Of a stretch of 64,000 bases of DNA, positions 26,321 through 43,203 are shown piece by piece. Where the stretch lies: positions 232,328-296,327 of IMG/VR virus record IMGVR_UViG_3300017991_005548; one strand, 5' to 3'. How positions within the stretch are numbered: position 1 is the stretch's first letter; each line of letters opens with the position of its first letter. The notes under the pieces are model-generated. The model was not told the DNA's origin, did no database searches, and worked only from the letters and a program-made list of their open reading frames with translations. The position numbers and the translations under genes are program-made.

Positions 26321-29300
26321 CTATTGGCTTTCGCTAGAACTTTCGCTAAACATTTCAGATGAAGAGGAAGATGACTCACCTTGAGATGATGTTGATGAGC
26401 TTTCGGAGTATAACTCACTAGAGGTACTTGAGCTTTCGGAGTATAACTCACTAGAGGTACTTGAACTTTCAGAGAATCCTTCAGATGATGTACTTGAACT
26501 ATCGGTACTTTGTGAGTATTGTTCACTAGATGTACTTGAACTATCAGTACTCTCTGTTAATCTACGGAAAGTTCCATCCTCCCAAATTGCGTTTCCTAAA
26601 TCACCATCCCAGACAAAGTTATCTCCATTCTCTAGTATCCATTGTTCGTCATTAATGGATGAAGATGAACTTTCTGAACCAGAGCTTGTGGAGAATGGAC
26701 AACTTTCTTCAACAAATCCAGGGTCGCCAAATCCCCTGCCTTTTGTCCAGACATTACCTTGATTAATTGGATAAATTTGGTTTGGGTCACTATAGAACAT
26801 CCAAAGATTTATGTCATTAGTAACTGTATCGTTAACGGCCCAATAAAAATTACCACCTGATTCTCCATAAAATAGATATAAGTCATTTGTATAACGTTTA
26901 TATATTGGATACCCATTAAATGTTTGTATAGTTTTGTAATACGGCCCATTAACATCTTGAGCAGGGACAGAGCTTGAACTTGATTCTGAAGAAAATTGTT
27001 CACTTGATGTTGAGGAACTCTGAGAAATACTGCTAGATGATTCAGATTTTGATGAATCGCTTACTGAACTTTCAGAAAGTGAGCTTGAACTTTCAGATTG
27101 AGAGCTAGAAGACTCACTAGTAAATCCTCCAGAACTTGTACTACTAGAGTCTTTAGAACTTGAACTACTTTCTCCAACTCCATCAGCAAGGGTTGAAAGT
27201 CTAATGGCAGATAAACCAATTTGGCTTGCTACCGTTAAATCTGTTCCACCTGCCTGACCTTGGAGAGATGTCCTTAACTCAACTTCCTCCCCCGCTGTCA
27301 ATTCAAGGACAGTGTGGGCGTTAAAACCACCATTCCAAGTGTCTGCTCCCCCCTGAGAACCACGTTTGTAATTACCATGACCCCCAATATTACTTTCGAC
27401 ATCATCAACAAACCAATCCGCGCCAAATGTAAGTCTTGTCCCACTAGTTGAAACTGTATCATCTGACAATCCATTCCCCATAAACAAATAATCATCAGTA
27501 ATATTAACTTGAACTTCAGCATTAGAGTTTTGAGTATAGGAGTTTGTGTCAATTTGATCAACATCTCTAGCAATATTAAGAATGGTACTTGCTCCCACAT
27601 CCTGTCCACCAGTACTATCATGAGTAATAATGGTTTCTGTATGCCATGGTACTTCCATAATTTCCAGACTAGATGAGTTAACAACTCTGGCCATACCTGT
27701 TCCATCAATGTCTGCGTTACCTCTTTGGATTTGCAAGATAAGATCTTGATTTGCAGTTGTATTATCGACTAGAAAAAGCGCATGAGCCACACCTGGACCT
27801 GAACTATTACCTCTTTCATAGACATATGAATAACTACCCTCAATTGCTGTACCACCCAAAGTTGTCCTTAATATTCTTTGTGTTCTACTAGATCCAGGTC
27901 CAAACTTGAAAGAATATTTGACAAGATATTTTGCGACCTTTTTAAGTCGAACGGTTGTTGCATTTTGTTGTTCGATAACATCTGTGTCAGTTTCGTCTTT
28001 AGTATTAAATGTAATGTCCTGCCATACTGTTCCAACGTAAGCTGTAGTATCTATATCGTCAAAGTATTGTCCATATGCGACTTTGTCTTCACTTGGCAAT
28101 TTTACCAACATTAATGAAGTTTTAGAGTTCGATAACACATCAGATGCACTTATAAGTACGGGTTGCCATTCAACTCGGACATCTTGTCCTCTAACTACAT
28201 CTATAAAAACCGCTCCAGATGTAAAGCCTTCATCATTCTCATTATTTCTGGCATAGCCATATCCATAACCACCATCTTGAACTACACCATTAACCAAAAC
28301 TCTTGATTGAATTGAATGTCTGCCATCAGATGTTGATGTTGATCTAATCTCATACATGAGTAGGTATTTACCATTGCTATCTATAGTGATGTCTGTATTG
28401 TTTACGTTTTTGTTATAAATGCTGTCTTCTCTAACAGTGTTATTAAATTGAACTCCTTCCCATACCCCAATGTTTCCTATTGTTTGGGTATTATTTGTGT
28501 CTTGGTAAATTGCAATAAGTCCAGTATTTTCTACATCAGACTCACTACTGGAACTTGTGATTCCCTCACTACTGGAACTATTGGAACTGTCAGAACTAAA
28601 TTCATCGTTAAGCCATTTATCAGCGAGATATGCTTCTACTTCATATCTCTCTGATGTAGACAGAACCCTATCATAGAGAAGTATTTCAGCGACTAAACCT
28701 TCAGTATATGAATCATTATTTCTGTTTCTTCCAACAGCATAAAAATCAAACAACGGATTGAAAACGGAACCAAGAGTTTGATCTAAGGTTTTCAATCCAT
28801 TTATATAACCTTTTAAACTATTGGCACCATCAGCAGTAATTGATAAAACGGTTGGCAATCTATTCCCAGAAGATTGCTCAATGGAATATTCTGTAGCTCC
28901 TACTCTAATTCCTAAAGTATCTGATGCATTATAATTGACTTGAAAGGAAGTGTCTGGAGTTTCTGAAGAATCATTACAAAACCAACTATCAAATTCAGAT
29001 TGAGTTTCTGTTGATTTATAAACCAAGAAAAAAGTCATTGGGCCTTGCCAATTAACGATATCTCTGTCTAAATAATCGTTATCACCATCAAACTCAACAG
29101 TGTTCCTTCCATTCATTGAGTTCAAGTTGTAAACTGGTTGATTTGCAGGGGTTGTCTGCTCCACATTAAGTATATTACCAGATTTGTCAGCCCAAGCAGA
29201 TACATTACTTCCGTTCAAGGTAATAGTGGATGCATCATCTGCATCTAGCCATAACCTCAATCCATTGGACGGGAGTCCTTCTGATGATGTTGAGCTACTA

Positions 29301-29404
29301 TCTCTGCTTGAACTGGAGCTACTATCTCTACTGGAAGAGCTAGAACTACTGTCTCTGCTTGAGCTTGAGCTACTATCAAAACTACTTGAACTACTTGAAG
29401 CCAT
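26321..29404 (-). CDS. serine-rich fibre-like protein: Ser tract, LamG/ConA-like domain, three C1q/TNF-like domains, small G.Y...NG.P.Y module
   Basis: LRLWLDADDASTI...VSAWADKSG...FDGDNDYL; triple jelly-roll repeats; Ser tracts at both ends. Confidence 0.75.
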   Translation of the reverse strand: MASSSSSSFDSSSSSSRDSSSSSSSRDSSSSSSRDSSSTSSEGLPSNGLRLWLDADDASTITLNGSNVSAWADKSGNILNVEQTTPANQPVYNLNSMNGRNTVEFDGDNDYLDRDIVNWQGPMTFFLVYKSTETQSEFDSWFCNDSSETPDTSFQVNYNASDTLGIRVGATEYSIEQSSGNRLPTVLSITADGANSLKGYINGLKTLDQTLGSVFNPLFDFYAVGRNRNNDSYTEGLVAEILLYDRVLSTSERYEVEAYLADKWLNDEFSSDSSNSSSSEGITSSSSESDVENTGLIAIYQDTNNTQTIGNIGVWEGVQFNNTVREDSIYNKNVNNTDITIDSNGKYLLMYEIRSTSTSDGRHSIQSRVLVNGVVQDGGYGYGYARNNENDEGFTSGAVFIDVVRGQDVRVEWQPVLISASDVLSNSKTSLMLVKLPSEDKVAYGQYFDDIDTTAYVGTVWQDITFNTKDETDTDVIEQQNATTVRLKKVAKYLVKYSFKFGPGSSRTQRILRTTLGGTAIEGSYSYVYERGNSSGPGVAHALFLVDNTTANQDLILQIQRGNADIDGTGMARVVNSSSLEIMEVPWHTETIITHDSTGGQDVGASTILNIARDVDQIDTNSYTQNSNAEVQVNITDDYLFMGNGLSDDTVSTSGTRLTFGADWFVDDVESNIGGHGNYKRGSQGGADTWNGGFNAHTVLELTAGEEVELRTSLQGQAGGTDLTVASQIGLSAIRLSTLADGVGESSSSSKDSSSTSSGGFTSESSSSQSESSSSLSESSVSDSSKSESSSSISQSSSTSSEQFSSESSSSSVPAQDVNGPYYKTIQTFNGYPIYKRYTNDLYLFYGESGGNFYWAVNDTVTNDINLWMFYSDPNQIYPINQGNVWTKGRGFGDPGFVEESCPFSTSSGSESSSSSINDEQWILENGDNFVWDGDLGNAIWEDGTFRRLTESTDSSSTSSEQYSQSTDSSSTSSEGFSESSSTSSELYSESSSTSSELYSESSSTSSQGESSSSSSEMFSESSSESQ

Positions 29405-29463: not shown

Positions 29464-32400
29464 TTATCCAAAACCAAATAAACAGTATTGATCTGGGAAT
29501 GCCTCTGATGAACTTGAACTTTCGGAGAATCCTTCGCTTGAACTTGAACTTGAACTTTCGGAGAATCCTTCGCTTGAACTTGAACTTTCTGAAGAAGAGC
29601 TTTCTGAAGAAGAGCTTTCAGAGAAACCCTCTGATGAACTGCTACTTGAATCTTTAGAACTACTTGATGACGAAATATCAGCTTCAAAACAAGTTGCCAT
29701 TGCTGACAAACTGATATTAGTACCAGTAACAGTAGTTCCTGTTTCAGTGTACCACCTACCTTTAATGGTATAGGTTCCTGCTGGTAATTTATTTTCTGTT
29801 CTTACAAAAATTGAGCAACTTCCATCTTCATTAGCTGTTCCATGACTTCTTCTAATCTCACCATAATCAGTTCCATCAATGTTGATCGTGAAAAGAACAT
29901 CTCTATTTGCAACATCTGCTGATGTCTGTAATGTCATGCATGCAAAAATGTGGCCCTCTTGATTTAACTGTAGGGTTATGGAAGATCCATCTATATCCTC
30001 TATGGAAGTTGCAGTTGTTGTATCAGAATTAACTATTGTCTGGGATGATGGAAGAAACTCTTCTTGATTTGTTTCGCATCCGAAGGCCGTAAGCATAAAT
30101 GGAGCACCAGTGGCAGTAACTGGAGATTCAACACTCCACCTTCCTTTAACTGTTATGTCTCCAGGACCAAAGTTACTTCCAGTTCTTGAAGCTATACATA
30201 TAGAAGATCTGTCTCCTGCACTTGAATGGAACCTGGTAATAGGCAACTCTTGACCACCAATGTTCAGGGCGCAAGTAATGTCTTTGGCGGCTCCACCAGA
30301 AATGTATGTGGTTGCAGATAGGAAACCAAAAATTGGATGGTTCGTCTGCATGGTCAAGTCTTGAGTTAAGCCATCAATATCCTCTAGTGTTGCAGATGTT
30401 GTTGTGTCATTTGCAACTGTATCATATATTGATGGGATTTCATTTCCATAACAACTCTGCATAGGAATGGCGATAACAGTGATGCTAGTTGCAGATAGAG
30501 TTCCTCCTTCAGTATACCATCTACCTTTAACTGTGTATGTCCCTGCTGGAAGAGTGCTTGGAGTTCTATAAACAACACCAACACTACCATAATCATTTGA
30601 ACTTGACTGGTATCTAGTAATCACAGGAGAATCTGTTCCATTGATGCTAATGGCGAAATAACCTTCTTGGTTATTAGTTGTATTGTTGCTTGATAACGAC
30701 ATGAATCCCATTATGTGGGCATCGTCAACCAATATAACGTCAACGCTTGCTCCATCGATATCCTCAAGAGCGGTTGTATTGGTTGTGGAGTCAGATGCAA
30801 CAACTGCTCTTTCAACAAACATGCAATTAAGACATTCCAAGCTTGAAGAGCTACTTGATGAACTGCTAAATCCTTCACTACTTGAGCTTGAAGGAGAAGA
30901 TTCAGAAATACTTGACGATGACTCAGACAGAGATGAAGACGATTCGGACTGAGAACTCTCTGAGAAAGAACTCTCAGATTGACTACTGCTGGATTCTGAT
31001 GTACTACTTGAGCTAGATGATTCTGAGCTTATACTTTCAGTAAACTCATCGCAGTGTCTGTACCTAAAATGAACGTTCTCTGTAGAACTACTTGATGAGT
31101 TACTACTTGATGATTCACTCTGCGAACTTGAACTTTCTGAGAATCCTTCGGATGAACTGCTTGAAGGAGAGGATTCCGACTGACTAGATGATGATTCTGA
31201 TTGAGAACTACTAGACTCACTTTGTGATGACGAACTCTCTGACTGAGAAGATTCACTTTGAGAACTAGAACTCTCTGACTGCGAAGAACTGGATTCAGAT
31301 TGAGATGAATCGGACTGACTACTTGAGCTTTCAGACTGACTACTTGAGCTTTCAGATTGAGATGAATCGGACTGACTAGATGAACTTTCAGATTGACTAC
31401 TTTCACTTTGTGAACTGCTTGACTCTGATTGACTACTTTCAGACTGAGATGATTCACTTTGAGATGATTCCGATTGACTACTTATACTTTCGGTAAATAA
31501 ATCGCATAACAAATATTTGTAATGAACGTTTTCTGTTGAACTACTTGATGATTCACTACTTGAGCTTTCACTTTGAGAACTTGAGCTTTCAGAGAACCCT
31601 TCAGATGAACTACTTGAGCTTTCAGAGAACCCTTCAGATGAGCTACTTGAGCTTTCAGAGAACCCTTCAGATGAGCTACTTGACTCAGATTGTGACGACT
31701 CTGATTGCGAAGAAGAACTTTCAGACTGGGAGCTACTAGACTCAGATTTACTACTTTCACTTTGACTGCTACTGGACTCTGACTGACTGCTACTGGACTC
31801 ACTTTGTGACGACTCTGATTGCGAAGAAGAACTTTCAGACTGGGAGCTACTGGACTCACTCTGAGATGATTCACTTTGAGAACTACTCGATTCCGATTTA
31901 GAACTACTGGACACAGACGATTCACTCTGACTGCTACTACTTTCTGACTGAGAACTTGAGCTTTCAGATTTTGAACTACTGGATTCTGATTGTGAACTAC
32001 TGGATTCACTTTGAGATGATTCACTCTTAGAACTGCTGGACTCTGATACAGAACTTTCGGAAATCGAACTACTAGATTCAGACTGAGAGCTTTCACTCTG
32101 AGATGATGAACTTTCACTTTCTGATGAGGAGCTTTCTGATTGAGAGCTACTGGACTCAGATTGCGAACTTTCTGATTGAGAGCTACTGGACTCACTTTGA
32201 GATGACTCACTTTTACTACTGCTTGATTCGGATTGAGAAGATTCACTCTTTGAGCTACTGGATTCTGACACAGAACTTTCAGAAATCGAACTGCTAGATT
32301 CTGACTGAGAACTCTCACTCTGCGATGAAGAACTTTCTGACTGACTACTTGAACTCTCACTCTGCGATGAAGACGATTCAGATTGAGAACTCTCACTTTG

Positions 32401-35400
32401 AGATGATGAAGATTCACTTTGAGATGAGGATGATTCAGATTTAGAACTGCTGGACTCAGACTGAGAAGATTCACTTTTACTGCTACTAGATTCAGATTGT
32501 GAACTTTCGCTCTGAGATGATGAACTTTCACTTTCTGAGGAAGAACTCTCTGATTGAGAACTACTAGATACAGAGGATTCACTCTGACTACTTGAACTTT
32601 CTGATTGAGATGATTCTGATTGAGAACTACTGGACTCACTTTGAGATGACGAACTCTCACTTTGACTACTGCTGGATTCAGATTGAGAACTTTCAGATTG
32701 AGAGGAAGATGATTCGCTCTTTGAAGATGAACTCTCGGACTCAGAAGAACTTGATTCACTTTGTGATGATTCAGATTCTGAACTACTCGATTCAGATTGA
32801 GAACTCTCAGACTGAGATGATGAAGATTCACTTTGTGATGAAGATGATTCAGACTGAGAACTACTGGATTCAGATTGTGAAGAGCTGGATTCAGACTGAG
32901 AGCTACTGGATTCAGATTGTGAGCTTTCACTCTGACTAGATGAACTTTCTGATTTAGATGAACTACTTTCTGACTGAGATGATTCAGATTGACTGCTTGA
33001 ACTTTCACTTTCTGACGAAGAACTTTCAGATCTTGAACTGCTGGACTCACTTTGAGATGACTCACTTTGAGATGAACTCGACTCACTTTGAGATGATGAG
33101 CTTTCACTCTGACTGCTACTTGATTCAGATTGAGATGAACTTGATTCAGATTGAGAACTTTCACTCTGAGATGAACTACTTTCGGACTGACTACTGCTGG
33201 ATTCAGACACAGAACTTTCTGACTGAGATGATTCAGATTGACTACTGGAGCTTTCACTCTCTGACGATGAACTCTCAGACTGTGAACTGCTGGACTCTGA
33301 TTTTGAACTGCTGGACTCTGATTGCGAGCTTTCGCTCTGGGAGCTAGAGCTTTCGCTTTGACTACTGCTGGACTCAGATTTTGACGATGAGCTTTCAGAT
33401 TGAGATGATTCAGATTGTGATGAACTTGACTCTGATTCTGAACTACTTGATTCACTTTGAGATGATTCACTCTTACTACTACTGGATTCAGATTGAGAGC
33501 TACTGGACTCACTTTGAGATGATTCAGATTGAGAGCTACTGGACTCAGACTGAGAAGATGAACTTTCGGATTGACTGCTTTCACTTTGTGAACTGCTTGA
33601 CTCTGATTGACTACTTGAACTCTCAGACTGTGAACTACTCGACTCTGATTCAGATGAACTAGACTCACTTTGAGAACTAGATGATTCGGATTTAGAGCTA
33701 GAGCTTTCAGACTGAGAACTTTCGCTCTGACTACTACTTGATTCACTTTGAGATGACTCTGACTGACTACTGCTGGATTCACTTTCTGATGAAGAACTTT
33801 CGCTCTGACTACTACTAGATTCAGACTGAGATGACTCACTTTGAGAGGAAGAACTCTCTGACTGAGACGATTCAGATTGAGAACTTGAGCTTTCAGATTG
33901 AGATGAATCACTCTGACTAGATGATGATTCAGACTGTGAAGAACTGGACTCAGATTGACTGCTACTGGACTCACTTTCAGACGAAGAACTTTCAGATTGG
34001 GATGAACTGGATTCTGATTGAGAGCTTTCACTTTGACTACTGCTGGATTCAGACACAGAACTTTCTGACTGCGAAGATTCGGACTGACTGCTGGAACTTT
34101 CACTTTCTGAAGATGAACTCTTAGATTGTGAACTACTTGATTCAGATTGAGATGAACTTGACTCTGATTCTGAACTACTTGATTCAGATTGTGAACTACT
34201 TGATTCAGATTGTGAACTACTTGATTCAGATTGAGAACTACTGGACTCAGATTGTGAACTACTTGATTCAGACTGTGAACTGCTTGACTCAGATTGACTA
34301 CTACTGGACTCTGACTGAGAACTACTCGATTCAGATTGACTACTGCTTGATTCGGATTGAGAGCTTTCAGATTGAGAAGAGCTAGACTCAGATATAGACG
34401 ATTCACTTTGCGAACTGCTGGACTCTGACTGAGATGAACTAGATTCAGAAACAGAAGATTCAGACTGACTACTTGAACTCTCTGATTGAGATGAAGAGCT
34501 TTCAGAAACAGAAGATTCGCTCTGTGACGAGGATGATTCTGATTCAGATTGTGATGATTCTGATTGAGAACTACTAGACTCACTTTGTGATGACGAACTC
34601 TCTGACTGAGAAGATTCACTTTGAGAACTAGAACTCTCTGACTGCGAAGAACTACTCTCAGATACAGATGACTCAGATTGAGAACTGCTGGACTCTGACT
34701 GTGATGAACTTGATTCGCTCTCTGAGCTTGAGCTTTCACTCTGACTGCTACTAGATTCAGATTTGGAAGAAGAGGATTCACTCTGACTGCTACTAGATTC
34801 AGATTGGGAGCTTGAAGACTCAGACTCACTACTTGAAGATTCACTTTGAGACGATTCTGATTGAGAAGAGCTAGACTCAGATTGACTGCTACTCGATTCA
34901 GACTCAGATGAAGATGATTCTGATTGACTACTCTCTGATTTACTACTACTGGATTCACTTTCGGATTGCGAACTCTCACTTTGACTACTGCTGGATTCAG
35001 ACTGAGAACTTTCAGATACAGAAGACTCACTTTGTGATGAACTAGATTCACTTTGACTACTGCTGGATTCACTTTCTGATGAAGAACTTTCAGACTGAGA
35101 AGAGCTACTTTCAGATTGAGACGAAGAACTCTCTGATTGACTACTACTAGATTCAGACTTAGAACTTGAACTTTCACTAAATAATCCAGAAGATGAACTA
35201 GAGGAACTAACTGGACACTCTCCATTCTGAACATTAGGAGCGGGAGATGTTCCAGACCCAACAAACCAGGTTTCTGTTGATGGAGAAACCCATGGCTCTG
35301 TTATACCAGTGTTATATGCGGAAACGCCCTCTAATGTAGTTGATAAGGTCCATCTACTGATATTAGAGAAGAAAAGAAATCTTGATCCATCACTGTAATA

Positions 35401-38400
35401 TGTAGTGTCGTTATGAACTCCTGCCGCATAGTAACTTCCATTGTAGTTATCGTCTCCCGCTAACTCAACACAATAAACTGGCCCAAGATCTATACTTGAT
35501 ATACTTGAACTCGAATCTATAGATGAACTACTTGAACTAAATTGTTCAGAAGAACTGCTAGATGATGAGCTTTCCCCTTTACTTGAACTACTGGACTCAG
35601 ATTTAGAGGACTCAGATTGAGAACTTGATGATTCTGATTGAGATGATTCACTTTGAGACGACGAACTTTCAGATTTGGACGATTCACTCTGACTAGATGA
35701 ACTTTCTGACTGGCTACTTTCTGACTGAGAACTACTGGATTCACTTTGAGATGATTCACTCTTACTACTGCTGGATTCAGATTGAGAGCTACTGGACTCA
35801 GACTGAGAGGACTCTGATTGTGAAGATGAGCTTTCAGACTGAGATGATTCAGATTGACTGCTTGAACTTTCACTTTCTGACGAAGAACTTTCAGATTTAG
35901 ATGAACTAGACTCACTTTGAGAACTTGAGCTTTCAGACTGCGATGATTCACTTTGAGAACTACTTGATTCACTTTGAGATGATTCAGATTGGCTACTTGA
36001 ACTTTCAGACTGAGATGATTCACTTTGAGATGAAGAACTCACTGATTGCGAAGATTCGCTTTGAGATGAAGACGATTTCGATTGAGATGAACTGGATTCT
36101 GACACAGAACTCTCTGACTGAGAACTGCTGGATTCACTTTCTGACGAAGAACTTTCGGATTTTGAACTTGACGATTCTGATTGTGATGACTCTGACTTGG
36201 ACGAACTACTTTCAGACTGACTGCTACTTGACTCACTTTGAGAGGACTCAGATTGAGAACTTGAGCTTTCAGATTGGCTACTTTCAGATTGAGAACTGCT
36301 GGATTCACTTTTAGAGCTTGAACTATTCGATTGTGAACTACTTGATTCAGATTGTGAACTACTTGATTCAGATTGTGAAGACGAACTCTCAGACTGAGAC
36401 GATTCACTTTGTGAACTACTAGACTCAGATTGACTACTCGAACTTTCGCTCTTACTACTACTGCTTTCAGATTTACTACTTTCTGATTCAGATTGGGATG
36501 ACTCAGATTGAGAACTACTTGAATTAGATTGGCTACTCGAACTTTCGCTCTGCGAACTTTCTGATTGTGATGAACTGGATTCGCTCTGGGAACTTTCAGA
36601 TTGTGATGAACTGGACTCAGACTGGGAACTTTCAGATTGTGATGAACTGGACTCAGACTGAGAACTCTCTGATTTACTACTTTCAGATTGAGATGAGGAT
36701 GACTCAGATTGAGATGAACTACTTTCAGATTGAGATGAGGATGACTCACTTTGAGATGAACTTGATTCTGAAAATTGTTCAGAACTTGAACTTGAACTTT
36801 CAGAGAATTTACCAGATGAACTGGATTCAGAATTTCCCCCACTAGACTCAGAGCTTGTGCTTGACGAGAACTGCTCTGAACTGGAACTAGAGTTTGACGA
36901 AAATTGTTCTGAACTACTGGACTCTGATTGAGACGAACTGGACTCTGATTTACTACTGCTAGATTCACTTTGGGAACTTTCAGACTGAGACGATTCAGAT
37001 TCCGAACTACTGGATTCAGATTGTGAAGATTCACTCTGAGAGCTTGAACTTTCAGACTGAGATGACTCACTTTGAGATGAAGACGATTCACTTTTAGACG
37101 AACTACTTTCAGACTGACTACTGCTGGACTCTGATTGAGACGATGAGCTTTCTGATTGCGAACTTTCTGATTGCGATGACTCTGACTGAGATGAACTACT
37201 CTCAGATTGCGAGGATTCACTCTGAGATGATGAAGATTCGCTCTGACTACTGCTAGATTCTGACTGAGATGATTCACTTTGAGACGAAGAACTCTCTGAT
37301 TGCGAAGATTCGCTTTGAGAACTACTAGATTCAGACTGAGAGGACTCTGATTGTGAAGATGAGCTTTCAGACTGAGAGCTACTGGATTCGCTTTGAGATG
37401 AACTTGACTCTGACTGAGAACTACTAGATTCAGACTGACTACTTTCACTTTGAGAACTACTAGATTCAGACTGAGAACTACTAGATTCAGACTGACTACT
37501 TTCACTTTGAGAACTACTAGATTCAGACTGAGAACTACTGGACTCAGACTGAGATGATTCACTTTGAGAAGACTCTGATTGACTACTACTTGATTCAGAT
37601 TTTGACGATGAGCTTTCAGACTGAGATGATTCACTTTGAGATGAACTGGACTCAGATTGAGATGAACTAGATTCACTTTGGGAACTTTCAGATTGAGAAC
37701 TACTAGACTCGCTTTGAGATGAAGAACTCTCTGATTGCGAAGATTCGCTTTGTGAACTGCTTGATTCAGATTGAGAACTACTTGATTCAGACTGAGAACT
37801 ACTTGATTCAGACTGAGAACTCTCAGATTGCGAAGATGAGCTTTCAGACTGAGAACTACTGGATTCAGACTGACTACTTTCACTTTGAGATGAACTTGAT
37901 TCTGACTGAGAGCTACTGGATTCAGATTGAGACGATTCACTCTTACTACTACTGGATTCGCTTTGAGACGATGATGATTCAGACTGACTACTTTCACTTT
38001 GAGAACTACTGGATTCTGATTCTGATGATGAGCTTTCAGACTGTGATGATTCACTCTGAGATGATGACGAGTCAGACTGCGAACTACTAGATTCACTTTG
38101 AGATGATTCAGACTGAGAGGAAGAAGACTCACTTTGAGATGAACTACTTTCAGACTTACTACTGCTTGATTCACTCTGAGAACTTTCCGACTGCGAAGAA
38201 CTAGACTCAGATTCAGATTGTGAGCTTTCAGATAATGATGAACTACTCTCTGACTGAGATGATTCAGATTGAGAAGACTCTGATTGCGAGGAAGAACTTT
38301 CTGATTGGCTACTTGAACTTTCTGATTGTGAAGACTCACTTTGAGATGAACTTGATTCAGATTGAGATGAAGAACTCTCACTAAATAATCCAGATGAGGA

Positions 38401-41400
38401 ACTTGAAGAACTAACTGGGCATTCTCCCCCTTCTATGTTTGGAGCAGGAGCAGTCCCAGTAAGAGTCTCCCATGACAAAGTGTCAGGATCTACCCAAGGA
38501 GAAGTTATAGAAGTTCGATAGTCTTGTATTTCTGGAGATCTTTGTCCCAAACCCCAACGACTATCATTCGTGAAATACAACTCTTTACCATTTGCATTGA
38601 CAAAGTATGTTGTATCATTATGTACTCCTGCTGGATAATACGATCCATCATACGTTGGATCACCTGCAAATTCAGCACAATATGCCGATTGGATATCTAT
38701 ACTTGATACACTCGAACTTGAATCTATAGATGAACTACTTGAACTGAATTGTTCAGATGAACTGCTAGATGATGAGCTTTCCCCTTTGCTTGAACTACTT
38801 GATTCACTTTGAGAACTTGAACTTTCTGATTGAGATGATTCAGACTGCGAAGAACTGGATTCTGATTGAGATGATTCACTTTGACTACTGCTGGATTCAC
38901 TTTGAGAACTCTCAGACTGCGAAGAACTGGATTCTGATTGAGATGATTCAGACTGAGATGACTCTGATTTTGAAGAACTTGATTCCGATTGAGATGATTC
39001 AGACTGTGAAGAACTACTTTCCGACTGTGAAGAACTACTTTCTGACTGTGAAGATTCACTTTGGCTACTTGAACTCTCTGACTGTGAAGATTCACTTTGA
39101 GAAGAAGATGATTCCGATACAGATGATTCTGATTGAGATGAACTACTCTCTGATACAGATGATTCTGATTGAGATGAACTGGATTCAGATTGAGAACTTT
39201 CACTTTTGCTACTAGAGCTTTCAGACTGAGAACTCTCAGATTGAGAAGAGATGGATTGAGATGATTCTGATTGAGAGCTTGAGCTTTCAGAGAATTTTTC
39301 AGACGAACTTGACTCAGATTTTCCTCCACTTGATTCCGAACTTGATTCTGAACTAAATTTCTCAGAGCTACTGGACTCACTTTGAGATGAACTTGATTCG
39401 GATTGACTACTGCTGGATTCACTCTGAGAGCTTGACGATTCTGATTGAGAACTGCTTGATTCAGACTGAGATGATTCTGATTGAGATGAACTTGATTCTG
39501 ATTCAGATGAAGAACTCTCAGATTGTGATGAGCTACTCTCAGATTGACTACTTTCTGACTGAGATGATTCACTTTGAGAAGAACTCGATTCAGATTGACT
39601 ACTACTTGATTCAGATTGAGAACTTGAGCTTTCAGATTGGCTACTCTCAGATTGACTACTGCTTGATTCGGATTGAGACGACTCACTTTGTGAACTGCTC
39701 GACTCAGATCGTGATGAAGAAGACTCGGATTGGCTACTAGAGCTTTCAGACTGAGATGACTCACTCTGACTAGAGGATGATTCTGATTGAGACGAGGAAC
39801 TCTCTGACTGAGAGCTTTCGCTTTGGCTACTGCTTGATTCTGATTGCGATGAGCTACTCTCCGACTGAGAGCTTGAACTTTCTGATTGCGATGACTCGCT
39901 CTGAGACGAACTCGATTCAGATTGACTACTACTTGATTCTGATACAGATGATTCGCTTTGAGAGCTACTGGATTCAGACTGACTACTTGAACTTTCTGAT
40001 TGAGATGAACTTGACTCGGACTGTGAAGACTCGCTCTGAGAACTACTGGATTCTGATTGCGATGAGGAACTCTCAGAGAATCCCTCTGATGAACTTGAAC
40101 TTTCTGATTGTGAAGAGCTACTTTCACTTTGAGAACTTGAACTCTCTGAGAAACCTCCAGATGAACTAGACTCAGATTGTCCTCCACTAGATGAAGAACT
40201 CGAACTTTCTGAAACCCCTTCAGAAGATGAACTCGAACTCAATGAAAATCTTTCTGATGAACTTGAACTCGATGAAAATCTTTCTGATGAACTTGATTCA
40301 GATTTGGAACTCGATGATTCAGACTGACTACTAGAAGAGATGCCTAAGCTCGAAGATGACTCACTTGAAGAAGAAACGCATGGCCCCTTACAAACAGGCA
40401 AGATGTCTCCACTGGTAATAATGCCTGTCATGTCATTGTCCATGGTGATAAAGACATTCAACCCAGCAATTAACTTAATGAATCCCTGTTCTGGACCGCT
40501 ACTGGTTAACAGACATACAGTTTCCCCTTCTACCCAATCATCAATATGACCTGAGACAAACACAAGATCTTTTAGACCAATAACAAGAATCTCAGTAGTT
40601 TCACAACCATCTAAGCTTGAAGAGCTACTTTCCCCTAAGGAACTCTCTGATGATAATGAGAACCCTTGACTCGATGAACTATAGCGTTGAGAACTTTCTG
40701 AACTAGTTGAGCTTGAAGAGTTGCATGGACCCTTACAAACCTTAATGGTATCACCAACATTGACAATACCCATCATCGATTGTTCCATTCTCAAATAAAC
40801 AGCAGGATCAATTAAAAGATTAACTTTACCCTGATATTCTTGACCCCCAATCTCAAGACATATTAATTCATTAAGCACCCATTCATCAAAATAGTTCGAG
40901 ACAAAAACGATATCAGTTCCACCAACTACTTGAGCAACATTCTCTTCGCAAGAACCCATGCTTGATGAGCTACTCGATGAACTGCTAGTGAAACCTAATG
41001 AAGATGATGATTGAGATGATTGGCTAGACTCACTTGAAGATAAACTACTTGATGAATATCCTTCACTTGAAGAAGAACTGCTCGATGAGTATTTCTCAGA
41101 TGAGCTAGAACTCTCCGAATAACCAAGACTTGAAGAAGAACTACTTGAAGAGTATCTTTCAGATGAACTACTTTCTGAGTATCCTTCTGATGAGCTTGAT
41201 GAGCTTGATGAATCTAATGAACTGCTCGAAGAACTGTAACCTTCTGAAGAAGAACTGCTCGAAGAACTGTAAAGTTTATCAAAGTATGGAGTTTCAAGAA
41301 TGTAAATCGTATCACTCTGATTTACGGCGATACCACCAACTCCGCACCAATCATCTGCTCTAGGATAATCTCTGACCAAAGCTGTGTTACCATCTTGGTC

Positions 41401-42294
41401 AACTCTAACCATTCTGCTACCATAGGATTCATCATAATCAATAACATAAACATATCCAGACTGGTTGATATCCATTAAGAAGATATCTAAATACTGTGTT
41501 GTTCCAGTTGGGCCTAATTCAAACCCTCTTGTTCCGCTACCAGAGTAACGAAGTAAATTGAAATTTTTGTCAAGTCTTTTTAGCTTATAGTTCTTGGAAT
41601 CGGCAATAATTAGATCACCACCGTCTCTAATTCCAAGACCGAATGGAGTATTGAGCAACGAATCTGGACCAATGCCTAAAGTATCTCCAGGGACTCCTCC
41701 AATTCCAGCAACAGTTGATACATTATTAATACCATATCGAATGAATCTAATGGCATGATTTAAAGAGTCAGCAATAAATAAATTGCCAGAAGCATCTACG
41801 GCGATATCTCTTGGCTCATTTAGCAACGCATGATCATTGTCATCAATTTCTATGCAATTACCATCTCTGAAACCTGCGGCTCCATATTTATCTCCACAAA
41901 CCAATGAAACTTTTCTGTCAGGGGTAATTCTGCGAATCTGGTTGTTCCCAGTATCAGCAACATAAATATTTCCTGTTGCATCAATAGACAACCCACCAGG
42001 AGTATTAAATAAGGCATCATCAGCATCAACGATTTTATCACCGTTATTTCCAGCAACACCTGGCGTACCTGCAAACAATATAGTTTGACCATCATGAAGA
42101 ACTCTGGTAATAATATTTTGATATGGGTCAGAGATATAAATTGTACCTGAATGGTCAATAATAATCCCAAAAGGATCAGTGCTCCCCTCAGTACTAAAAG
42201 AAAGGTTTGCCGCAACAATTCGCTCTGCAAACCCATATTCATCAATATAGTACTGGTTTTGGATTAATAATCTACTTGTGTCGCACTTGGCCAT
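29464..42294 (-). CDS. giant 4276-aa serine-rich repeat protein with N-terminal NHL propeller and C-terminal triple BclA/C1q-like domains
   Basis: One uninterrupted 12.8-kb ORF; NHL repeats (IYVADTGNNQIRRI, FIADSLNHAIR); about 3000 aa of SESSQ/SESSSSQ repeats; three [LI]EDIDG...KGRW domains. Confidence 0.9.
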   Translation of the reverse strand: MAKCDTSRLLIQNQYYIDEYGFAERIVAANLSFSTEGSTDPFGIIIDHSGTIYISDPYQNIITRVLHDGQTILFAGTPGVAGNNGDKIVDADDALFNTPGGLSIDATGNIYVADTGNNQIRRITPDRKVSLVCGDKYGAAGFRDGNCIEIDDNDHALLNEPRDIAVDASGNLFIADSLNHAIRFIRYGINNVSTVAGIGGVPGDTLGIGPDSLLNTPFGLGIRDGGDLIIADSKNYKLKRLDKNFNLLRYSGSGTRGFELGPTGTTQYLDIFLMDINQSGYVYVIDYDESYGSRMVRVDQDGNTALVRDYPRADDWCGVGGIAVNQSDTIYILETPYFDKLYSSSSSSSSEGYSSSSSSLDSSSSSSSSEGYSESSSSERYSSSSSSSSLGYSESSSSSEKYSSSSSSSSEGYSSSSLSSSESSQSSQSSSSLGFTSSSSSSSSSMGSCEENVAQVVGGTDIVFVSNYFDEWVLNELICLEIGGQEYQGKVNLLIDPAVYLRMEQSMMGIVNVGDTIKVCKGPCNSSSSTSSESSQRYSSSSQGFSLSSESSLGESSSSSLDGCETTEILVIGLKDLVFVSGHIDDWVEGETVCLLTSSGPEQGFIKLIAGLNVFITMDNDMTGIITSGDILPVCKGPCVSSSSESSSSLGISSSSQSESSSSKSESSSSERFSSSSSSSERFSLSSSSSSEGVSESSSSSSSGGQSESSSSGGFSESSSSQSESSSSQSESSSSSEGFSESSSSQSESSSSQSESSQSESSSSQSESSSSQSESSSSQSESSVSESSSSQSESSSSQSESSQSESSSSQSESSSSQSESSSSQSESSQSESSSSQSESSSSQSESSQSESSSSQSESSSSRSESSSSQSESSQSESSSSQSESSQSESSSSQSESSSSQSESSSSQSESSQSESSQSESSSSQSESSSSESESSSSQSESSQSESSSSQSESSSSQSESSSSQSESSSSQSESSSSEKFSSESSSESSGGKSESSSSEKFSESSSSQSESSQSISSQSESSQSESSSSKSESSQSESSSSQSESSVSESSSSQSESSVSESSSSQSESSQSESSSSQSESSQSESSSSQSESSSSQSESSQSESSSSKSESSQSESSQSESSSSQSESSQSESSSSQSESSQSESSSSQSESSQSESSSSQSESSSSSKGESSSSSSSSEQFSSSSSSIDSSSSVSSIDIQSAYCAEFAGDPTYDGSYYPAGVHNDTTYFVNANGKELYFTNDSRWGLGQRSPEIQDYRTSITSPWVDPDTLSWETLTGTAPAPNIEGGECPVSSSSSSSGLFSESSSSQSESSSSQSESSQSESSSSQSESSSSQSESSQSESSQSESSSSLSESSQSESESSSSQSESSQSESSSSKSESSSSQSESSSSQSESSQSESSSSQSDSSSSQSESSQSESSSSESESSSSQSESSQSESSSSQSESSSSKSESSQSESSSSQSESSSSQSESSQSESSSSQSESSSSQSESSQSESSSSQSESSSSQSESSSSQSESSQSESSSSQSESSSSQSESSQSESSSSQSESSSSQSESSQSESSSSKSESSSSQSESSQSESSQSESSSSQSESSSSQSESSQSESSSSQSESSSSQSESSQSESSSSQSESSSSQSESSSSQSESSSSQSESSQSESSSSQSESSQSESSSSQSESSQSESSSSQSESSSSQSESSQSESSSSQSESSQSESSQSESSSSQSESSSSQSESSSSKSESSSSQSESSQSESSSSQSESSQSESSSSESESSQSESSQSESSSSKSESSSSQSESSSSEQFSSNSSSSSEQFSSSTSSESSGGNSESSSSGKFSESSSSSSEQFSESSSSQSESSSSQSESSSSQSESSSSQSESSKSESSQSESSSSQSESSQSESSSSQSESSQSESSSSQSESSQSESSSSQSNSSSSQSESSQSESESSKSESSSSKSESSSSQSESSSSQSESSQSESSSSQSESSSSQSESSSSQSNSSSSKSESSSSQSESSQSESSSSQSESSQSESSSSQSESSSSKSESSQSESSSSKSESSSSESESSSSQSESSVSESSSSQSKSSSSQSESSQSVSSSSQSESSQSESSSSQSESSQSESSSSQSESSQSESSSSQSESSSSKSESSSSESESSSSQSESSQSESSSSQSESSQSESSSSQSESSSSKSESSQSESSSSQSESSQSESSSSQSESSKSESSSSQSESSQSESSSSQSESSKSESSSSSKGESSSSSSSSEQFSSSSSSIDSSSSISSIDLGPVYCVELAGDDNYNGSYYAAGVHNDTTYYSDGSRFLFFSNISRWTLSTTLEGVSAYNTGITEPWVSPSTETWFVGSGTSPAPNVQNGECPVSSSSSSSGLFSESSSSKSESSSSQSESSSSQSESSSSQSESSSSESESSSSQSESSSSQSESSVSESSQSESSSSQSESSQSESESSSSKSESSQSESSSSESESSSSQSESSSSQSESSQSESSSSESESSSSQSESSSSQSESSSSKSESSSSQSESSSSESESSSSQSESSSSQSESSVSESSSSQSESSSSQSESSQSESSSSQSESSSSQSESSQSESESSSSQSESSVSESSSSQSESSSSQSESSVSESSSSQSESSSSQSESSISESSSSQSESSQSESSSSQSESSSSQSESSSSQSESSSSQSESSSSQSESSSSQSESSSSQSESSSSQSESSSSESESSSSQSESSSSQSKSSSSESESSSSQSESSQSESSVSESSSSQSESSQSESSSSQSESSSSESESSSSQSESSSSQSESSSSQSDSSQSESSSSQSESSQSESSSSQSESSQSESSSSQSESSSSESESSSSQSESSQSESSSSQSESSQSESSSSKSESSSSQSESSSSESESSSSQSESSSSQSESSSSQSESSQSESSSSQSESSSSQSESSQSESSSSQSESSSSKSESSQSESSSSESESSSSQSESSQSESSSSKSESSSSQSESSSSQSESSQSESSSSKSESSSSQSESSSSESESSSSQSESSQSESSVSESSSSQSESSSSQSESSQSESSSSQSESSSSQSESSSSQSESSSSQSESSQSESSSSRSESSSSESESSSSQSESSQSESSSSKSESSSSQSESSQSESSSSQSESSSSQSESSSSQSESSSSQSESSSSQSESSQSESSSSESESSQSESSSSESESSSSKSESSSSQSESSQSESSSSQSESSSSQSESSSSQSESSQSESSSSQSESSVSSSSQSESSSSESESSSSQSESSQSESSSSKSESSQSESSSSKSESSSSQSESSSSQSESSQSESSSSQSESSSSQSESSSSQSESSQSESSSSISESSVSESSSSKSESSQSESSSSKSESSQSESSSSQSESSQSESSSSQSESSSSESESSSSQSESSQSESSSSISESSVSESSSSKSESSQSESSSSQSESSSSKSESSSSQSESSSSQSESSVSSSSKSESSSSQSESSQSESSSSQSESSSSQSESSQSESSSSQSESSSSQSESSKSESSSSQSESSSSQSESSQSESSSSSEGFSESSSSSSEGFSESSSSSSEGFSESSSSQSESSSSESSSSSTENVHYKYLLCDLFTESISSQSESSQSESSQSESSQSESSSSQSESSQSESSSSQSDSSQSESSSSQSESSSSQSDSSQSESSSSQSESSSSQSESSQSESSSSQSESSSSQSESSSSQSESSPSSSSSEGFSESSSSQSESSSSNSSSSSTENVHFRYRHCDEFTESISSESSSSSSTSESSSSQSESSFSESSQSESSSSLSESSSSISESSPSSSSSEGFSSSSSSSSSLECLNCMFVERAVVASDSTTNTTALEDIDGASVDVILVDDAHIMGFMSLSSNNTTNNQEGYFAISINGTDSPVITRYQSSSNDYGSVGVVYRTPSTLPAGTYTVKGRWYTEGGTLSATSITVIAIPMQSCYGNEIPSIYDTVANDTTTSATLEDIDGLTQDLTMQTNHPIFGFLSATTYISGGAAKDITCALNIGGQELPITRFHSSAGDRSSICIASRTGSNFGPGDITVKGRWSVESPVTATGAPFMLTAFGCETNQEEFLPSSQTIVNSDTTTATSIEDIDGSSITLQLNQEGHIFACMTLQTSADVANRDVLFTINIDGTDYGEIRRSHGTANEDGSCSIFVRTENKLPAGTYTIKGRWYTETGTTVTGTNISLSAMATCFEADISSSSSSKDSSSSSSEGFSESSSSESSSSESSSSSEGFSESSSSSSSEGFSESSSSSEAFPDQYCLFGFG
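30840..40340 (-). repeat. degenerate 15/21-bp coding repeat array (SESSQ, SESSSSQ)
   Basis: 5- and 7-residue periodicity in protein; DNA units diverged at synonymous sites. Confidence 0.95.
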
Positions 42295-42366: not shown

Positions 42367-43203
42367 TCAACTTGATGAGCTTGAAGAGTCAGTTGATTCA
42401 GATGAACTTGAAAAAGAACTGGAACTATCTATGGAACTAGACGAACTTTCTGAAGATATACTAGACATAGATGTACTTGTACTGGCTAACTCAAATTTAT
42501 TTATTCTTTCCACATCATTGCCTCCAACCATGAACGCAAATTCATGAATAGCAACATCTGAAGTAAACTCACCAGCTAACTCCATAAGTATTTTTACTTT
42601 ATCAGCATATACGGATATGTCGGTTAGAGTTTCAATCTGATTGGGTTCAATCCTTTGATAATCCAACGGATCAAGAGAATCATCTCCTGCAACAGAGAAT
42701 CTAACAATTGTATCTTCGCTGATGTCTCCATTGAAGGTTAATAGGATTGTTTCAGGTTTAAAACCTAAGTCAAATGCTTTTGTGTAAAACTTTGTGGAGG
42801 CATTTGATGTTATGTATCTAAGATTTATATTGCGAACTTTGGGGATATAGGTAGTGTCGGTTGTCATTACAGCCATAAACTGTAGATACCTACCATTTTG
42901 CATCCCCAACTCAAAAGTGCTGTTATAGTATGGCCCAAACCATTTTTCGTTTGTAAGGGCTTTATTCGCTGATCTGACAAAGAAGCCAACATTCAGTTCA
43001 TTCTGATCCCCTTCCCATGTTGCGTCAAGCCATCTTACAAATCCATCATCTGCAATAATATTGTCAGAAATAAAAACGCCTGTAAGCCTATCTATTGGCT
43101 GGATGGCTGTAGGTTTAACGCCTAAGTAATTGAAAGCAACACTGTTGATTCCTGGTATGTTCGCTTGTACAACGTTTGCATTGTTAATATTGATCAGAGC
43201 CAT
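42367..43203 (-). CDS. virion structural protein with C-terminal Ser tract
   Basis: W...TW...FFVRS...WFGPY...GRYLQF...P.V.NI.LRY beta-sandwich pattern of tail/baseplate proteins. Confidence 0.6.
   Translation of the reverse strand: MALININNANVVQANIPGINSVAFNYLGVKPTAIQPIDRLTGVFISDNIIADDGFVRWLDATWEGDQNELNVGFFVRSANKALTNEKWFGPYYNSTFELGMQNGRYLQFMAVMTTDTTYIPKVRNINLRYITSNASTKFYTKAFDLGFKPETILLTFNGDISEDTIVRFSVAGDDSLDPLDYQRIEPNQIETLTDISVYADKVKILMELAGEFTSDVAIHEFAFMVGGNDVERINKFELASTSTSMSSISSESSSSSIDSSSSFSSSSESTDSSSSSS

What the first reader, a model, noticed from the sequence alone, without database searches (positions are those of the whole stretch)
29464..42294. 4276-aa single ORF with about 3000 residues of S/E/Q repeats
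Seen: the frame stays open for 12.8 kb. An N-terminal NHL propeller and C-terminal jelly-roll domains are separated by about 3000 aa built from SESSQ and SESSSSQ units with rare K/V/D/N substitutions. Inference: fully extended at about 0.36 nm per residue, this would be about 1 micrometre long, acting as a tether or molecular ruler. S-Q-S-E matches the S-x-x-E acidophilic (CK2-type) kinase consensus, so a polyanionic phosphoprotein like phosvitin or DSPP is an alternative to glycosylation. Translating it would demand a lot of tRNA-Ser.
Basis: partly seen in the sequence, partly recalled or inferred. Interest (0 to 1): 0.8.

Follow-up and report, generated by a model that had tools for sequence, protein, structure and literature searches.

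The report
Giant serine-rich tether protein of megaphage
A roughly 525-kb phage from sediment encodes a real 4,276-residue protein in which folded binding domains are strung along about 2,900 residues of acidic Ser/Glu/Gln repeats whose codons are thoroughly scrambled, most likely a long flexible surface tether rather than a rigid fibre or ruler.

Summary
Window 29464-42294 (minus strand) is one 4,276-codon ORF, 52% Ser. It has an N-terminal NHL propeller and about 2,900 residues of SESSSSQ/SESSQ units. At the C-terminus are three jelly-roll domains.

The repeat is not one run. It is four arrays, interrupted by two A domains, two B domains and two short Cys motifs.

Assembly artefact is unlikely:
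- The DNA is nearly non-repetitive; the longest exact repeat is 102 nt.
- Two assemblies from different samples agree over 14 kb, with 3 SNPs and no indel.
- No long reads exist.

New findings:
- Units are 94% identical as peptides, but their codons match no better than random synonymous draws.
- The C-terminal module is a single-chain pseudo-trimer of C1q/TNF-like domains. Its homologs lie in structural gene clusters of other phages.
- The same linker style joins domains in five neighbouring genes and in a 2,527-aa paralog about 256 kb away on the circular ~525-kb genome.

Best reading (inferred, 0.45): a virion-displayed, monomeric, polyanionic tether carrying adhesin modules. The 1 µm figure is a contour length; a relaxed coil would span about 50-60 nm. 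The ruler idea is unsupported. Glycosylation and phosphorylation remain untested.

The parts
29464..42294 (-). Whole ORF, 4,276 aa plus stop. There is no Shine-Dalgarno-like motif upstream of the ATG.
41233..42294 (-). aa 1-354: NHL-repeat beta-propeller.
   Evidence: Pfam NHL 9e-19 and TEN_NHL 2e-13; PDB sequence hits to PknD-type and teneurin NHL propellers
40984..41232 (-). aa 355-437: first S-rich linker, built from SSSSSSSEGY-type units.
40339..40983 (-). aa 438-652: two copies of domain A, about 75 aa each and Cys-bracketed, 41% identical to each other. No Pfam or PHROG match.
38728..40338 (-). aa 653-1189: S/E/Q array 1 (537 aa).
38416..38697 (-). aa 1200-1293: domain B1, 94 aa, with a Cys near each end.
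   Evidence: B1 and B2 are 57% identical by BLASTP. The five copies in the giant and its paralog align with 27 invariant columns. The fold model is poor.
35527..38382 (-). aa 1305-2256: S/E/Q array 2 (952 aa), with a short GG-containing break at 36811-36852.
35212..35490 (-). aa 2269-2361: domain B2.
31561..35175 (-). aa 2374-3578: S/E/Q array 3 (1,205 aa), the longest. Near its 3' end in the gene's direction is a near-perfect 33-nt x 3.2 tandem repeat at 31579-31683.
31012..31560 (-). aa 3579-3761: two short conserved Cys motifs (TENVHYKYLLCDLFTESI and a variant) flanking a 118-aa S/E/Q array. The 524,692-bp contig from the other sample starts and ends here (window 31447 and 31569).
29641..30870 (-). 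aa 3809-4218: three tandem jelly-roll domains D1-D3 (34-43% identical to each other), predicted to pack as a single-chain C1q/TNF-like pseudo-trimer.
   Evidence: AF2 pLDDT 94.1, pTM 0.91; Foldseek against PDB and BFVD; 144 homologs
29467..29640 (-). aa 4219-4276: S-rich linker and C-terminal tail EAFPDQYCLFGFG. A similar tail ends the paralog (EAFPEQYFGDGFEE), and a like motif lies near the C-terminus of homolog P0003 (CYYFYGFG).
26321..29404 (-). Next gene downstream, 1,027 aa. Globular domains are joined by the same S-rich linker style. It has a BclA_C-like stretch and a PHROG 'virion structural protein' match.
23961..26267 (-). Second gene downstream, 768 aa, with a right-handed beta-helix and a PHROG 'tail protein' N-terminus. 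It looks like a tailspike.
42367..43203 (-). Gene upstream, 278 aa, ending in a 36-aa S-rich tail.

Best explanation
The gene encodes a surface protein of a roughly 525-kb tailed phage that acts as a long, flexible, strongly acidic tether.

- Anatomy: about 2,900 residues of intrinsically disordered SESSSSQ/SESSQ chain (net charge of the whole protein -525) space out folded binding modules. These are an NHL propeller at one end, small Cys-bracketed A and B domains along the chain, and a C1q/TNF-like lectin-type head at the other end.
- Monomer logic: the head's three jelly rolls come from one chain. The protein can therefore work as a monomer, unlike classical trimeric tail fibres.
- Reach: relaxed, the chain would occupy a cloud tens of nanometres across. 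Under tension it could extend towards 1 µm. Either way it would enlarge the radius over which the particle makes a first, reversible contact with host surface glycans.
- Selection: array length and peptide sequence are under selection. Codons are scrambled so that recombination between repeats cannot readily shorten the gene.
- Shown: the architecture, the folds, the codon scrambling, the paralogs, the linker use and the structural-module context of homologs.
- Inferred: virion attachment, monomeric state, disorder, glycan binding and which end is anchored.
For: Architecture and folds:
- establish the domain layout and folds.
- Single D domains resemble the TNF-like lectin domain of BC2L-C (TM 0.70-0.73 on the target).
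- The whole module matches engineered single-chain C1q and TNF-family trimers (E about 1e-14).
- It also matches uncultured Caudovirales proteins (TM 0.64-0.71).

Context of D-module homologs, which lie in phage structural clusters:
- after a Mu gp48-like baseplate gene (L022);
- between capsid and tail-tube genes (L027);
- beside terminase, portal and coat genes (L026).

Other homologs flank the module with other kinds of repetitive spacer. The window neighbours are a beta-helix tail-protein-like gene and a LamG/BclA_C-like gene.

Linker role:
- The same S-rich style joins domains in five other window genes and in two genes at L024.
- Irregular 5/7 unit order argues against a folded solenoid.

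Selection:
- 266 seven-residue units are 94.4% identical as peptides.
- Their codons match at 33.7%, against 32.5% expected from random draws.
- Similarity barely declines with distance between units.
- The giant and its paralog share the peptide grammar, but their longest exact DNA match is 53 nt.
Against: - No direct evidence that the protein is in the virion or is expressed at all. No RNA run was listed.
- The PHROG 'structural' and 'tail' labels on the neighbours rest on short or generic domains.
- No baseplate, sheath or tube gene was recognised in the window.
- An NHL propeller is not a known virion-attachment domain.
- The B-domain fold could not be predicted (pLDDT 60.6).
- The strict order within units (S-E-S-S-(S-S)-Q) is more conserved than a pure spacer would need. 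This hints at recognition by a modifying enzyme or some other sequence-specific role.
- The gene lacks a Shine-Dalgarno motif, whereas 18 of 33 window genes have one.
Confidence: 0.45

Rival explanations
1. A mucin-like, heavily modified coat. The arrays are substrates for dense O-glycosylation or phosphorylation, and the product is a stiff, hydrated polyanionic brush on the particle. It would act as a steric or electrostatic shield against clay, debris and non-host surfaces, or as a cation-binding layer. Adhesion would be secondary. This overlaps with the best explanation but differs in what the arrays are for.
For: - The strictly conserved unit order, with every Glu preceded by Ser (S-x-x-E), fits enzyme recognition better than a mere spacer would.
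- Long Ser arrays interrupted by small Cys-bracketed domains resemble mucin PTS arrays with CysD domains (resemblance recalled from memory).
- A UDP-glucose/GDP-mannose dehydrogenase gene lies at 55882-56721.
- The net charge is -525.
Against: - No glycosyltransferase or protein kinase was found in the window or in the ORFs scanned at L024. However, less than a quarter of the genome was seen.
- Nothing was tested biochemically.
Confidence: 0.2
2. Not a virion protein. It would be a modular protein made in the infected cell and exported or released at lysis. It would be analogous to bacterial modular enzymes and binding proteins whose domains are joined by polyserine linkers, and would act on the host envelope, biofilm matrix or neighbouring cells.
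For: - Polyserine linkers joining carbohydrate-binding and catalytic modules are typical of secreted proteins of marine polysaccharide degraders (PMC2386152).
- Paralog genes at L024 carry LamG_3 and weak Nal1-family (protease-like) matches below Pfam's cutoff. They lie near an arabinofuranosidase-like gene and an LpxR gene.
- Subtilase and trypsin-like genes are in the window.
Against: - No signal peptide is visible at the N-terminus (by eye).
- No catalytic domain is in the giant protein.
- D-module homologs sit in structural modules of other phages.
Confidence: 0.2
3. Assembly artefact or decaying gene. The arrays would be collapsed, over-expanded or chimeric products of short-read assembly, or the ORF would not be translated as one protein.
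For: - Both assemblies are short-read.
- In each sample one of the two S/E/Q genes broke a contig.
- A third sample shows a 159-nt length variant in the paralog.
- No read or unitig spans an array.
Against: - Every k-mer of 127 nt or more is unique.
- Two samples agree over 14,044 nt with 3 SNPs and no indel.
- Unitig depth inside the arrays is 1.15-1.4 times the flank, not a multiple of it.
- The frame is kept through all arrays and links the independently supported domains.
- The codon usage of the arrays equals that of other genes.
Confidence: 0.05
4. Molecular ruler (tape-measure-like): the length of the chain sets the length of a virion structure.
For: Only the great length and the apparent selection on length.
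Against: - The composition is disorder-type and the unit order irregular.
- Folded binding domains are interspersed along the chain.
- No tail-tube, chaperone or distal-tail gene is adjacent.
- A paralog of very different length (2,527 aa) has the same grammar.
Confidence: 0.02

Closest known systems
Serine-rich repeat adhesins of Gram-positive bacteria (Fap1, GspB, PsrP; description recalled from memory)
   Same: Very long proteins in which thousands of Ser-rich repeat residues form an extended stalk that projects a folded binding region. PsrP is of similar size.
   Different: - This is a phage gene, not a bacterial one.
- The units are SESSSSQ/SESSQ, not alternating S-x dipeptides.
- There is no specialised signal peptide and no LPXTG anchor.
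- No accessory Sec or Gtf genes were seen in the window.
- Several folded domains are interspersed along the chain.
Polyserine linkers of modular carbohydrate-active proteins in marine and estuarine bacteria (PMC2386152, citing Howard et al. 2004)
   Same: Ser-rich, presumably flexible spacers joining independently folded modules. The short linkers in five neighbouring window genes look just like this.
   Different: - The arrays here are 10-20 times longer (537-1,205 aa, against 25 and 58 residues in the examples listed in PMC2386152).
- They have a regular acidic unit.
- They link binding domains rather than enzymes.
- No signal peptide is evident.
Phage tail fibres, tailspikes and minor tail proteins with C1q/TNF-like heads; BclA of Bacillus
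   Same: A distal jelly-roll head of the C1q/TNF type, and genes located among receptor-binding-type genes. D-module homologs lie in phage structural clusters.
   Different: Classical fibres are homotrimers with a rigid shaft (beta-helix, coiled coil or collagen). Here the three head domains are in one chain and the 'shaft' is a disordered polyanion.
Gel-forming mucins (recalled from memory)
   Same: Long hydroxy-amino-acid arrays interrupted by small Cys-containing domains and flanked by globular ends.
   Different: There is no Pro or Thr, Glu is abundant, there are no von Willebrand-type ends, and glycosylation is unknown.
Hair-like appendages and very large proteins of jumbo phages (PTm1, Y3: PMC13282480; proteins up to 7,694 aa: PMC7162821)
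   Same: Large phages do carry extra flexible appendages, and they encode very large putative structural proteins.
   Different: No sequence link was found, and the proteins forming those hairs were not compared here. No similar S/E/Q array was found in any detected homolog; the longest S-rich stretch among them is 147 aa.

Membership tests
NHL-repeat beta-propeller (Pfam PF01436) | Repeated NHL motifs scoring above Pfam's gathering threshold | tested here: met
   66.9 bits against a cutoff of 20, E 9e-19. PDB sequence matches reach down to 6e-28.
C1q/TNF-like jelly-roll superfamily (D module) | Beta-sandwich jelly-roll fold assembling as a three-fold head | tested here: met
   The AF2 model has pLDDT 94.1 and pTM 0.91. 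The top PDB matches are single-chain C1q head and single-chain APRIL-BAFF-BAFF (E about 1e-14, TMq 0.55-0.57). BFVD has a 'C1q domain-containing protein' match at TMq 0.64. This is similarity at fold level only: sequence identity is 8-10%, and no Pfam C1q or TNF hit was found.
Gram-positive serine-rich repeat adhesins (SRRP) | Long specialised N-terminal signal peptide and C-terminal LPXTG anchor | tested here: not met
   The N-terminus is MAKCDTSRLLIQ... and the C-terminus is ...QYCLFGFG.
Gram-positive serine-rich repeat adhesins (SRRP) | Linked accessory Sec and glycosyltransferase genes | tested here: not met
   No such Pfam family was found among the window ORFs scanned. The rest of the genome was not seen.
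Gram-positive serine-rich repeat adhesins (SRRP) | Very long Ser-rich repeat region acting as a stalk | tested here: inconclusive
   The long Ser-rich arrays are present, but with a different unit. The stalk behaviour is inferred.
Polyserine linkers | Ser-rich spacer between independently folded modules | tested here: met
   The arrays lie between the NHL, A, B and D domains. Short versions occur in five other genes. The length and the regular acidic unit go far beyond described linkers.
Trimeric phage tail fibre or tailspike | Rigid trimer-forming shaft (beta-helix, coiled coil or collagen repeat) | tested here: not met
   There are no such repeats. The arrays are S/E/Q with an irregular 5/7 unit order.
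Trimeric phage tail fibre or tailspike | Presence in the virion, attached to the baseplate, tail or head | not testable with these tools
   Only context is available: tail-like neighbours, and homologs in structural clusters.
Tape-measure protein (ruler) | Long helical protein encoded between tail chaperone and distal tail or baseplate genes | tested here: not met
   The composition is 52% Ser with interspersed beta domains. No tail-tube or chaperone family is adjacent.
Acidic phosphoproteins (phosvitin/DSPP-like) | Dense phosphorylation of Ser clusters by an acidophilic kinase | not testable with these tools
   The S-x-x-E motif is present in every unit. No kinase was found in the sequence seen.

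The most novel reading that the evidence does not exclude
Megaphages may have evolved a second way to build a host-capture appendage. Instead of a rigid homotrimeric fibre, they would use a single disordered, possibly modified, polyanionic chain of about 1 µm contour length. This chain carries several lectin-like modules and a covalently fused three-domain head. Its length would be protected against recombination by natural codon scrambling. A family of such proteins in one genome (at least two giants plus five or more short-linker members) would form the 'hair' of the particle.
Probability: 0.3. Interest if true: 0.75.

Novelty: new variant of a known kind. Interest (0 to 1): 0.62.

Why it matters
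If the reading is right, three things follow.

- Phage adhesion: it would show that very large phages use disordered, mucin- or SRRP-like tethers for adsorption. That is a different physical principle from the rigid fibres that dominate phage biology, and it could explain the hair-like appendages seen on some jumbo phages.
- Repeat evolution: the codon pattern is a clean natural example of long peptide repeats kept by selection while DNA repetition is erased. This bears on how repeat length is stabilised in recombination-prone genomes. It also mirrors the codon-scrambling trick used in synthetic biology.
- Protein engineering: the single-chain C1q/TNF-like head is a natural counterpart of engineered single-chain TNF-family and C1q constructs.

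A practical point also follows. A database trimming step cut through this gene, so genes of this kind are likely under-reported.

Tried and rejected
- GenBank phage records gave no match. This held for DNA of window 42300-62000 and for tblastn with the D module and the 768-aa neighbour.
- PHROGs found nothing for any domain of the giant protein.
- Pfam found nothing significant for domains A, B or D.
- The ESM Atlas gave only sub-threshold leads for A and B.
- The AF2 model of domain B from a 5-sequence alignment was too poor to search with (pLDDT 60.6), so the third fold search was not spent.
- A protein search with the 1,205-aa array returned nothing at E <= 1e-10. This is probably low-complexity filtering, so it is inconclusive about other S/E/Q giants.
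- A search for B-domain relatives among 550-1,750-aa proteins found none.
- Looking for the syntenic gene in relatives failed. Phages whose terminase is 50-76% identical are on contigs that do not reach this region.
- A Nei-Gojobori pN/pS estimate was discarded, because switches between TCN and AGY Ser codons are counted as non-synonymous steps. It was replaced by peptide-versus-codon identity.
- The Asp-rich D-x-D-x-D-G motifs at the paralogs' N-termini looked dockerin- or EF-hand-like by eye, but Pfam gave no hit, so that idea is not claimed.
- A chimeric join of two phages through the repeats was considered and judged unlikely. The two S/E/Q genes share only 38 of 7,554 31-mers, and the 296-kb contig bridges the ends of the 524-kb contig.
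- Promoter and terminator scans around the gene were no better than shuffles.
Full report
**Observation**

Window 29464-42294 on the minus strand is a single ORF of 4,276 codons with an ATG start. Its composition is 52.3% Ser, 12.6% Glu and 8.7% Gln. A sliding-window segmentation gives this layout:

| Residues | Segment |
|---|---|
| 1-354 | globular (NHL) |
| 355-437 | S-rich linker |
| 438-652 | two copies of domain A |
| 653-1189 | array 1 |
| about 1200-1293 | domain B1 |
| 1305-2256 | array 2 |
| about 2269-2361 | domain B2 |
| 2374-3578 | array 3 |
| 3579-3761 | two short Cys motifs around a 118-aa array |
| 3809-4218 | three tandem domains D1-D3 |
| 4219-4276 | S-rich linker and the tail EAFPDQYCLFGFG |

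The four main arrays total 2,812 aa. Of 407 parsed units, 206 are SESSSSQ and 109 are SESSQ. The commonest variants end in K, E or V. Five- and seven-residue units follow each other without a fixed period.

**Is it real?**

Inside the arrays a second frame of the same strand is also open for up to 1,260 codons. Openness there is a by-product of the composition. The weight lies elsewhere: the independently supported segments (NHL, A1, A2, B1, B2, the Cys motifs, D1-D3) are all joined in one frame.

At the DNA level the gene is almost non-repetitive:
- The longest exact repeat is 102 nt.
- 637 of 12,801 31-mers are non-unique.
- Every k-mer of 127 nt or more is unique.

The window is the last 64 kb of IMG/VR contig UViG_3300017991_005548 (296,327 bp).

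A metagenome contig from another sample, Ga0180433_10000003 (524,692 bp), covers window 31447-45490. It differs by 3 SNPs and has no indel. The changes are S1471N, one synonymous change, and V2085E. Its other end covers the window up to 31569, and the two ends overlap by 123 nt.

The IMG/VR entry UViG_3300018080_008436 (476,248 bp) is this same contig with its first 48,444 bp removed (offset verified). That trimming cuts through the gene. Because the 296-kb contig bridges the two ends of the 524-kb contig, the genome map is circular, at about 524.6 kb.

Logan unitigs of the three public runs match exactly inside the arrays. In the deepest run their depth is 77-94, against 66.7 in the C-terminal domain. 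This argues against a large collapse or expansion. Two of the three runs have almost identical depth profiles and may be the same data. No unitig spans an array and no long reads exist, so confirmation is strong but not final.

**Codon pattern**

Among 266 seven-residue units, random pairs are 94.4% identical as peptides. At identical residues their codons agree in 33.7% of cases, against 32.5% expected from random draws out of the arrays' own codon frequencies.

- The 209 exact SESSSSQ units have 165 different DNA versions.
- Their nucleotide identity is 0.614, against 0.589 expected.
- Similarity barely declines with distance between units.
- Both Ser codon classes (TCN and AGY) occur at every Ser position.
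- Ser, Glu, Gln and Lys codon usage equals that of other genes in the window.

The arrays are thus not the product of recent slippage. The peptide is conserved while DNA repetition has been erased.

Two inferences follow. First, the peptide sequence and length are under selection. Second, scrambled codons protect the length against recombination between repeats. A glimpse of that process comes from a 1,663-bp contig from a third sample. It is identical to the paralog described below except for a 159-nt in-frame deletion bounded by a 26-nt direct repeat.

**Folded parts**

- NHL propeller. Residues 1-354 match Pfam NHL at 9e-19, well above threshold. They also match PknD-type and teneurin propellers in the PDB.
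- D module. It has 144 homologs at E <= 1e-3 among 1.84 billion representative proteins, 36 of them below 1e-30, with lengths of 341-2,142 aa. With 26 of them as an alignment, AlphaFold2 gives pLDDT 94.1 and pTM 0.91: three eight-stranded sandwiches in a fixed arrangement.
- D module, fold matches in the PDB. The best matches are an engineered single-chain globular head of C1q and a single-chain APRIL-BAFF-BAFF trimer (E about 1e-14, TM about 0.56). Single domains match the TNF-like lectin domain of Burkholderia BC2L-C at TM 0.70-0.73 on the target.
- D module, fold matches among viral models. The best matches are uncultured Caudovirales proteins, one of them named as C1q-domain-containing, and giant-virus proteins, at TM 0.64-0.75.
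- D1-D3 are 34-43% identical to each other. The module is thus a natural single-chain pseudo-trimer of C1q/TNF-like jelly rolls.
- Domains A and B have no family match. The B model was unreliable.

**Context**

The window belongs to a tailed phage. It carries:
- a large terminase at 7770-9635;
- a ribonucleotide reductase with an intein;
- a lysozyme, ClpP, a subtilase and a trypsin-like protease.

The giant gene lies in a co-directional block. The next two genes are a 1,027-aa protein and a 768-aa protein. The first has a PHROG 'virion structural protein' match and a BclA_C-like stretch. The second is a beta-helix protein with a PHROG 'tail protein' N-terminus.

The same S-rich linker style (SSSSSEGY, SESSSSQ) joins domains in five other genes of the window. 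The short Cys motif recurs in one of them.

About 256 kb away on the same genome lies a 2,527-aa paralog. It has the same unit grammar, three B domains, eight Cys motifs, a LamG_3 domain and a similar C-terminal tail. Beside it is a 1,075-aa S-linker protein. The longest exact DNA match between the paralog and the giant gene is 53 nt.

D-module homologs elsewhere sit in phage structural clusters:
- after a Mu gp48-like baseplate gene;
- between capsid and tail-tube genes;
- in a P22-like contig next to terminase, portal and coat genes.

Some homologs carry S-rich linkers of up to 147 aa. Others flank the module with quite different repetitive spacers. The two large relatives found (2,454 and 3,062 aa) are not Ser-rich. 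The S/E/Q expansion here is therefore an extreme within its family.

**Mechanism**

The most likely reading is a virion-displayed, monomeric, flexible polyanionic tether that carries adhesin modules. Virion display rests on context only. The monomeric state is inferred from the fused three-domain head.

The contour length of about 2,960 disordered residues is about 1.07-1.12 µm. With the denatured-chain scaling law (recalled from memory), the relaxed end-to-end distance is about 56 nm and Rg about 23 nm. Dense modification would stiffen and extend the chain.

A ruler function is not supported.

The unit order is stricter than a spacer needs. This keeps open a mucin-like or phosphoprotein-like modified coat. 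No transferase or kinase was found in the parts of the genome I could read, and a UDP-sugar dehydrogenase is the only hint.

A non-virion, exported modular protein is the other serious rival. Polyserine linkers are typical of secreted modular proteins of marine polysaccharide degraders (PMC2386152).

**Comparison and novelty**

Very large proteins in huge phages are known, up to 7,694 aa, some tentatively structural (PMC7162821). Hair-like appendages on jumbo phages are described (PMC13282480).

The protein works like a serine-rich repeat adhesin or a hugely extended polyserine linker. It fails the membership features of the Gram-positive adhesin family (signal peptide, LPXTG, accessory secretion genes) and of trimeric tail fibres (rigid trimeric shaft).

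I found no description of such an array in a phage in two literature searches, and no similar array in any detected homolog. I rate it a new variant of a known kind.

**Limits**

- No expression data; no RNA run was listed.
- No long reads.
- Less than a quarter of the genome could be read.
- No tRNA genes were found in the window or in seven other loci.
- The host is unknown. A phage-borne LpxR homolog (E 4e-102) points to a host with an outer membrane.

Noticed in passing
L024:5423-13006 (contig Ga0180433_10000003, about 257.0-264.6 kb): A 2,527-aa paralog on the same genome. It has the same SESSSSQ/SESSQ grammar, three B domains, eight TENV..Y..C.LFTESI motifs, a LamG_3 domain and a similar C-terminal tail. 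The upstream gene (L024:2184-5411, 1,075 aa) shares its N-terminal domain and its S-linkers.
   Followed up: partly
L025:1-1663 versus L024:6084-7905: A contig from a third sample is identical to the paralog except for a 159-nt in-frame deletion inside an array, bounded by a 26-nt direct repeat. This is either a population length variant or a local assembly shortcut.
   Followed up: yes
window 31447-31569; L015, L023: The 524,692-bp metagenome contig starts and ends inside this gene, with a 123-nt end overlap. That implies a circular map of about 524.6 kb. The IMG/VR entry of 476,248 bp is the same contig with its first 48,444 bp trimmed off, which removes most of the giant gene.
   Followed up: yes
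window 26321-29404, 42367-43203, 45546-49997, 50008-53439, 53440-55833: Five other genes use short S-rich linkers of the same style (SSSSSEGY, SESSSSQ) between or after globular domains. The 797-aa protein also carries the short Cys motif (aa 540-554).
   Followed up: partly
L024:19240-20220 (minus strand): A phage-encoded homolog of the outer-membrane lipid A deacylase LpxR (Pfam E 4e-102). This suggests a host with an outer membrane and possible remodelling of its lipid A.
   Followed up: no
window 11845-15348 (minus strand): A ribonucleotide reductase gene interrupted by an intein with a LAGLIDADG homing-endonuclease domain.
   Followed up: no
window 31579-31683: A near-perfect 33-nt tandem repeat, 3.2 copies, encoding SSSSSSEGFSE-type units. 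It lies just beyond the point where the 524-kb contig ends, and is the most slippage-prone spot in the gene.
   Followed up: partly
window 42295-42320: The giant gene has no Shine-Dalgarno-like motif upstream of its ATG, whereas 18 of 33 window genes have one. This may mean low translation initiation.
   Followed up: partly
window 55882-56721; 44564-45544; 4590-5651; 21939-22511; 21152-21850: The window also holds genes for a UDP-glucose/GDP-mannose dehydrogenase, a subtilase, a trypsin-like protease, ClpP and a VWA-domain protein. The dehydrogenase is the only sugar-nucleotide hint near the S-rich genes.
   Followed up: no
L021:3038-3734: A contig from a sister sample (3300017989) carries a D-module homolog with SSSSSSTSL linkers. 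It also encodes release-factor-like genes (PCRF, RF-1).
   Followed up: no
window 30000-40000: GC skew on the plus strand turns positive across the arrays and is negative in the flanks. This reflects the arrays' codon composition and is not a replication signal.
   Followed up: partly
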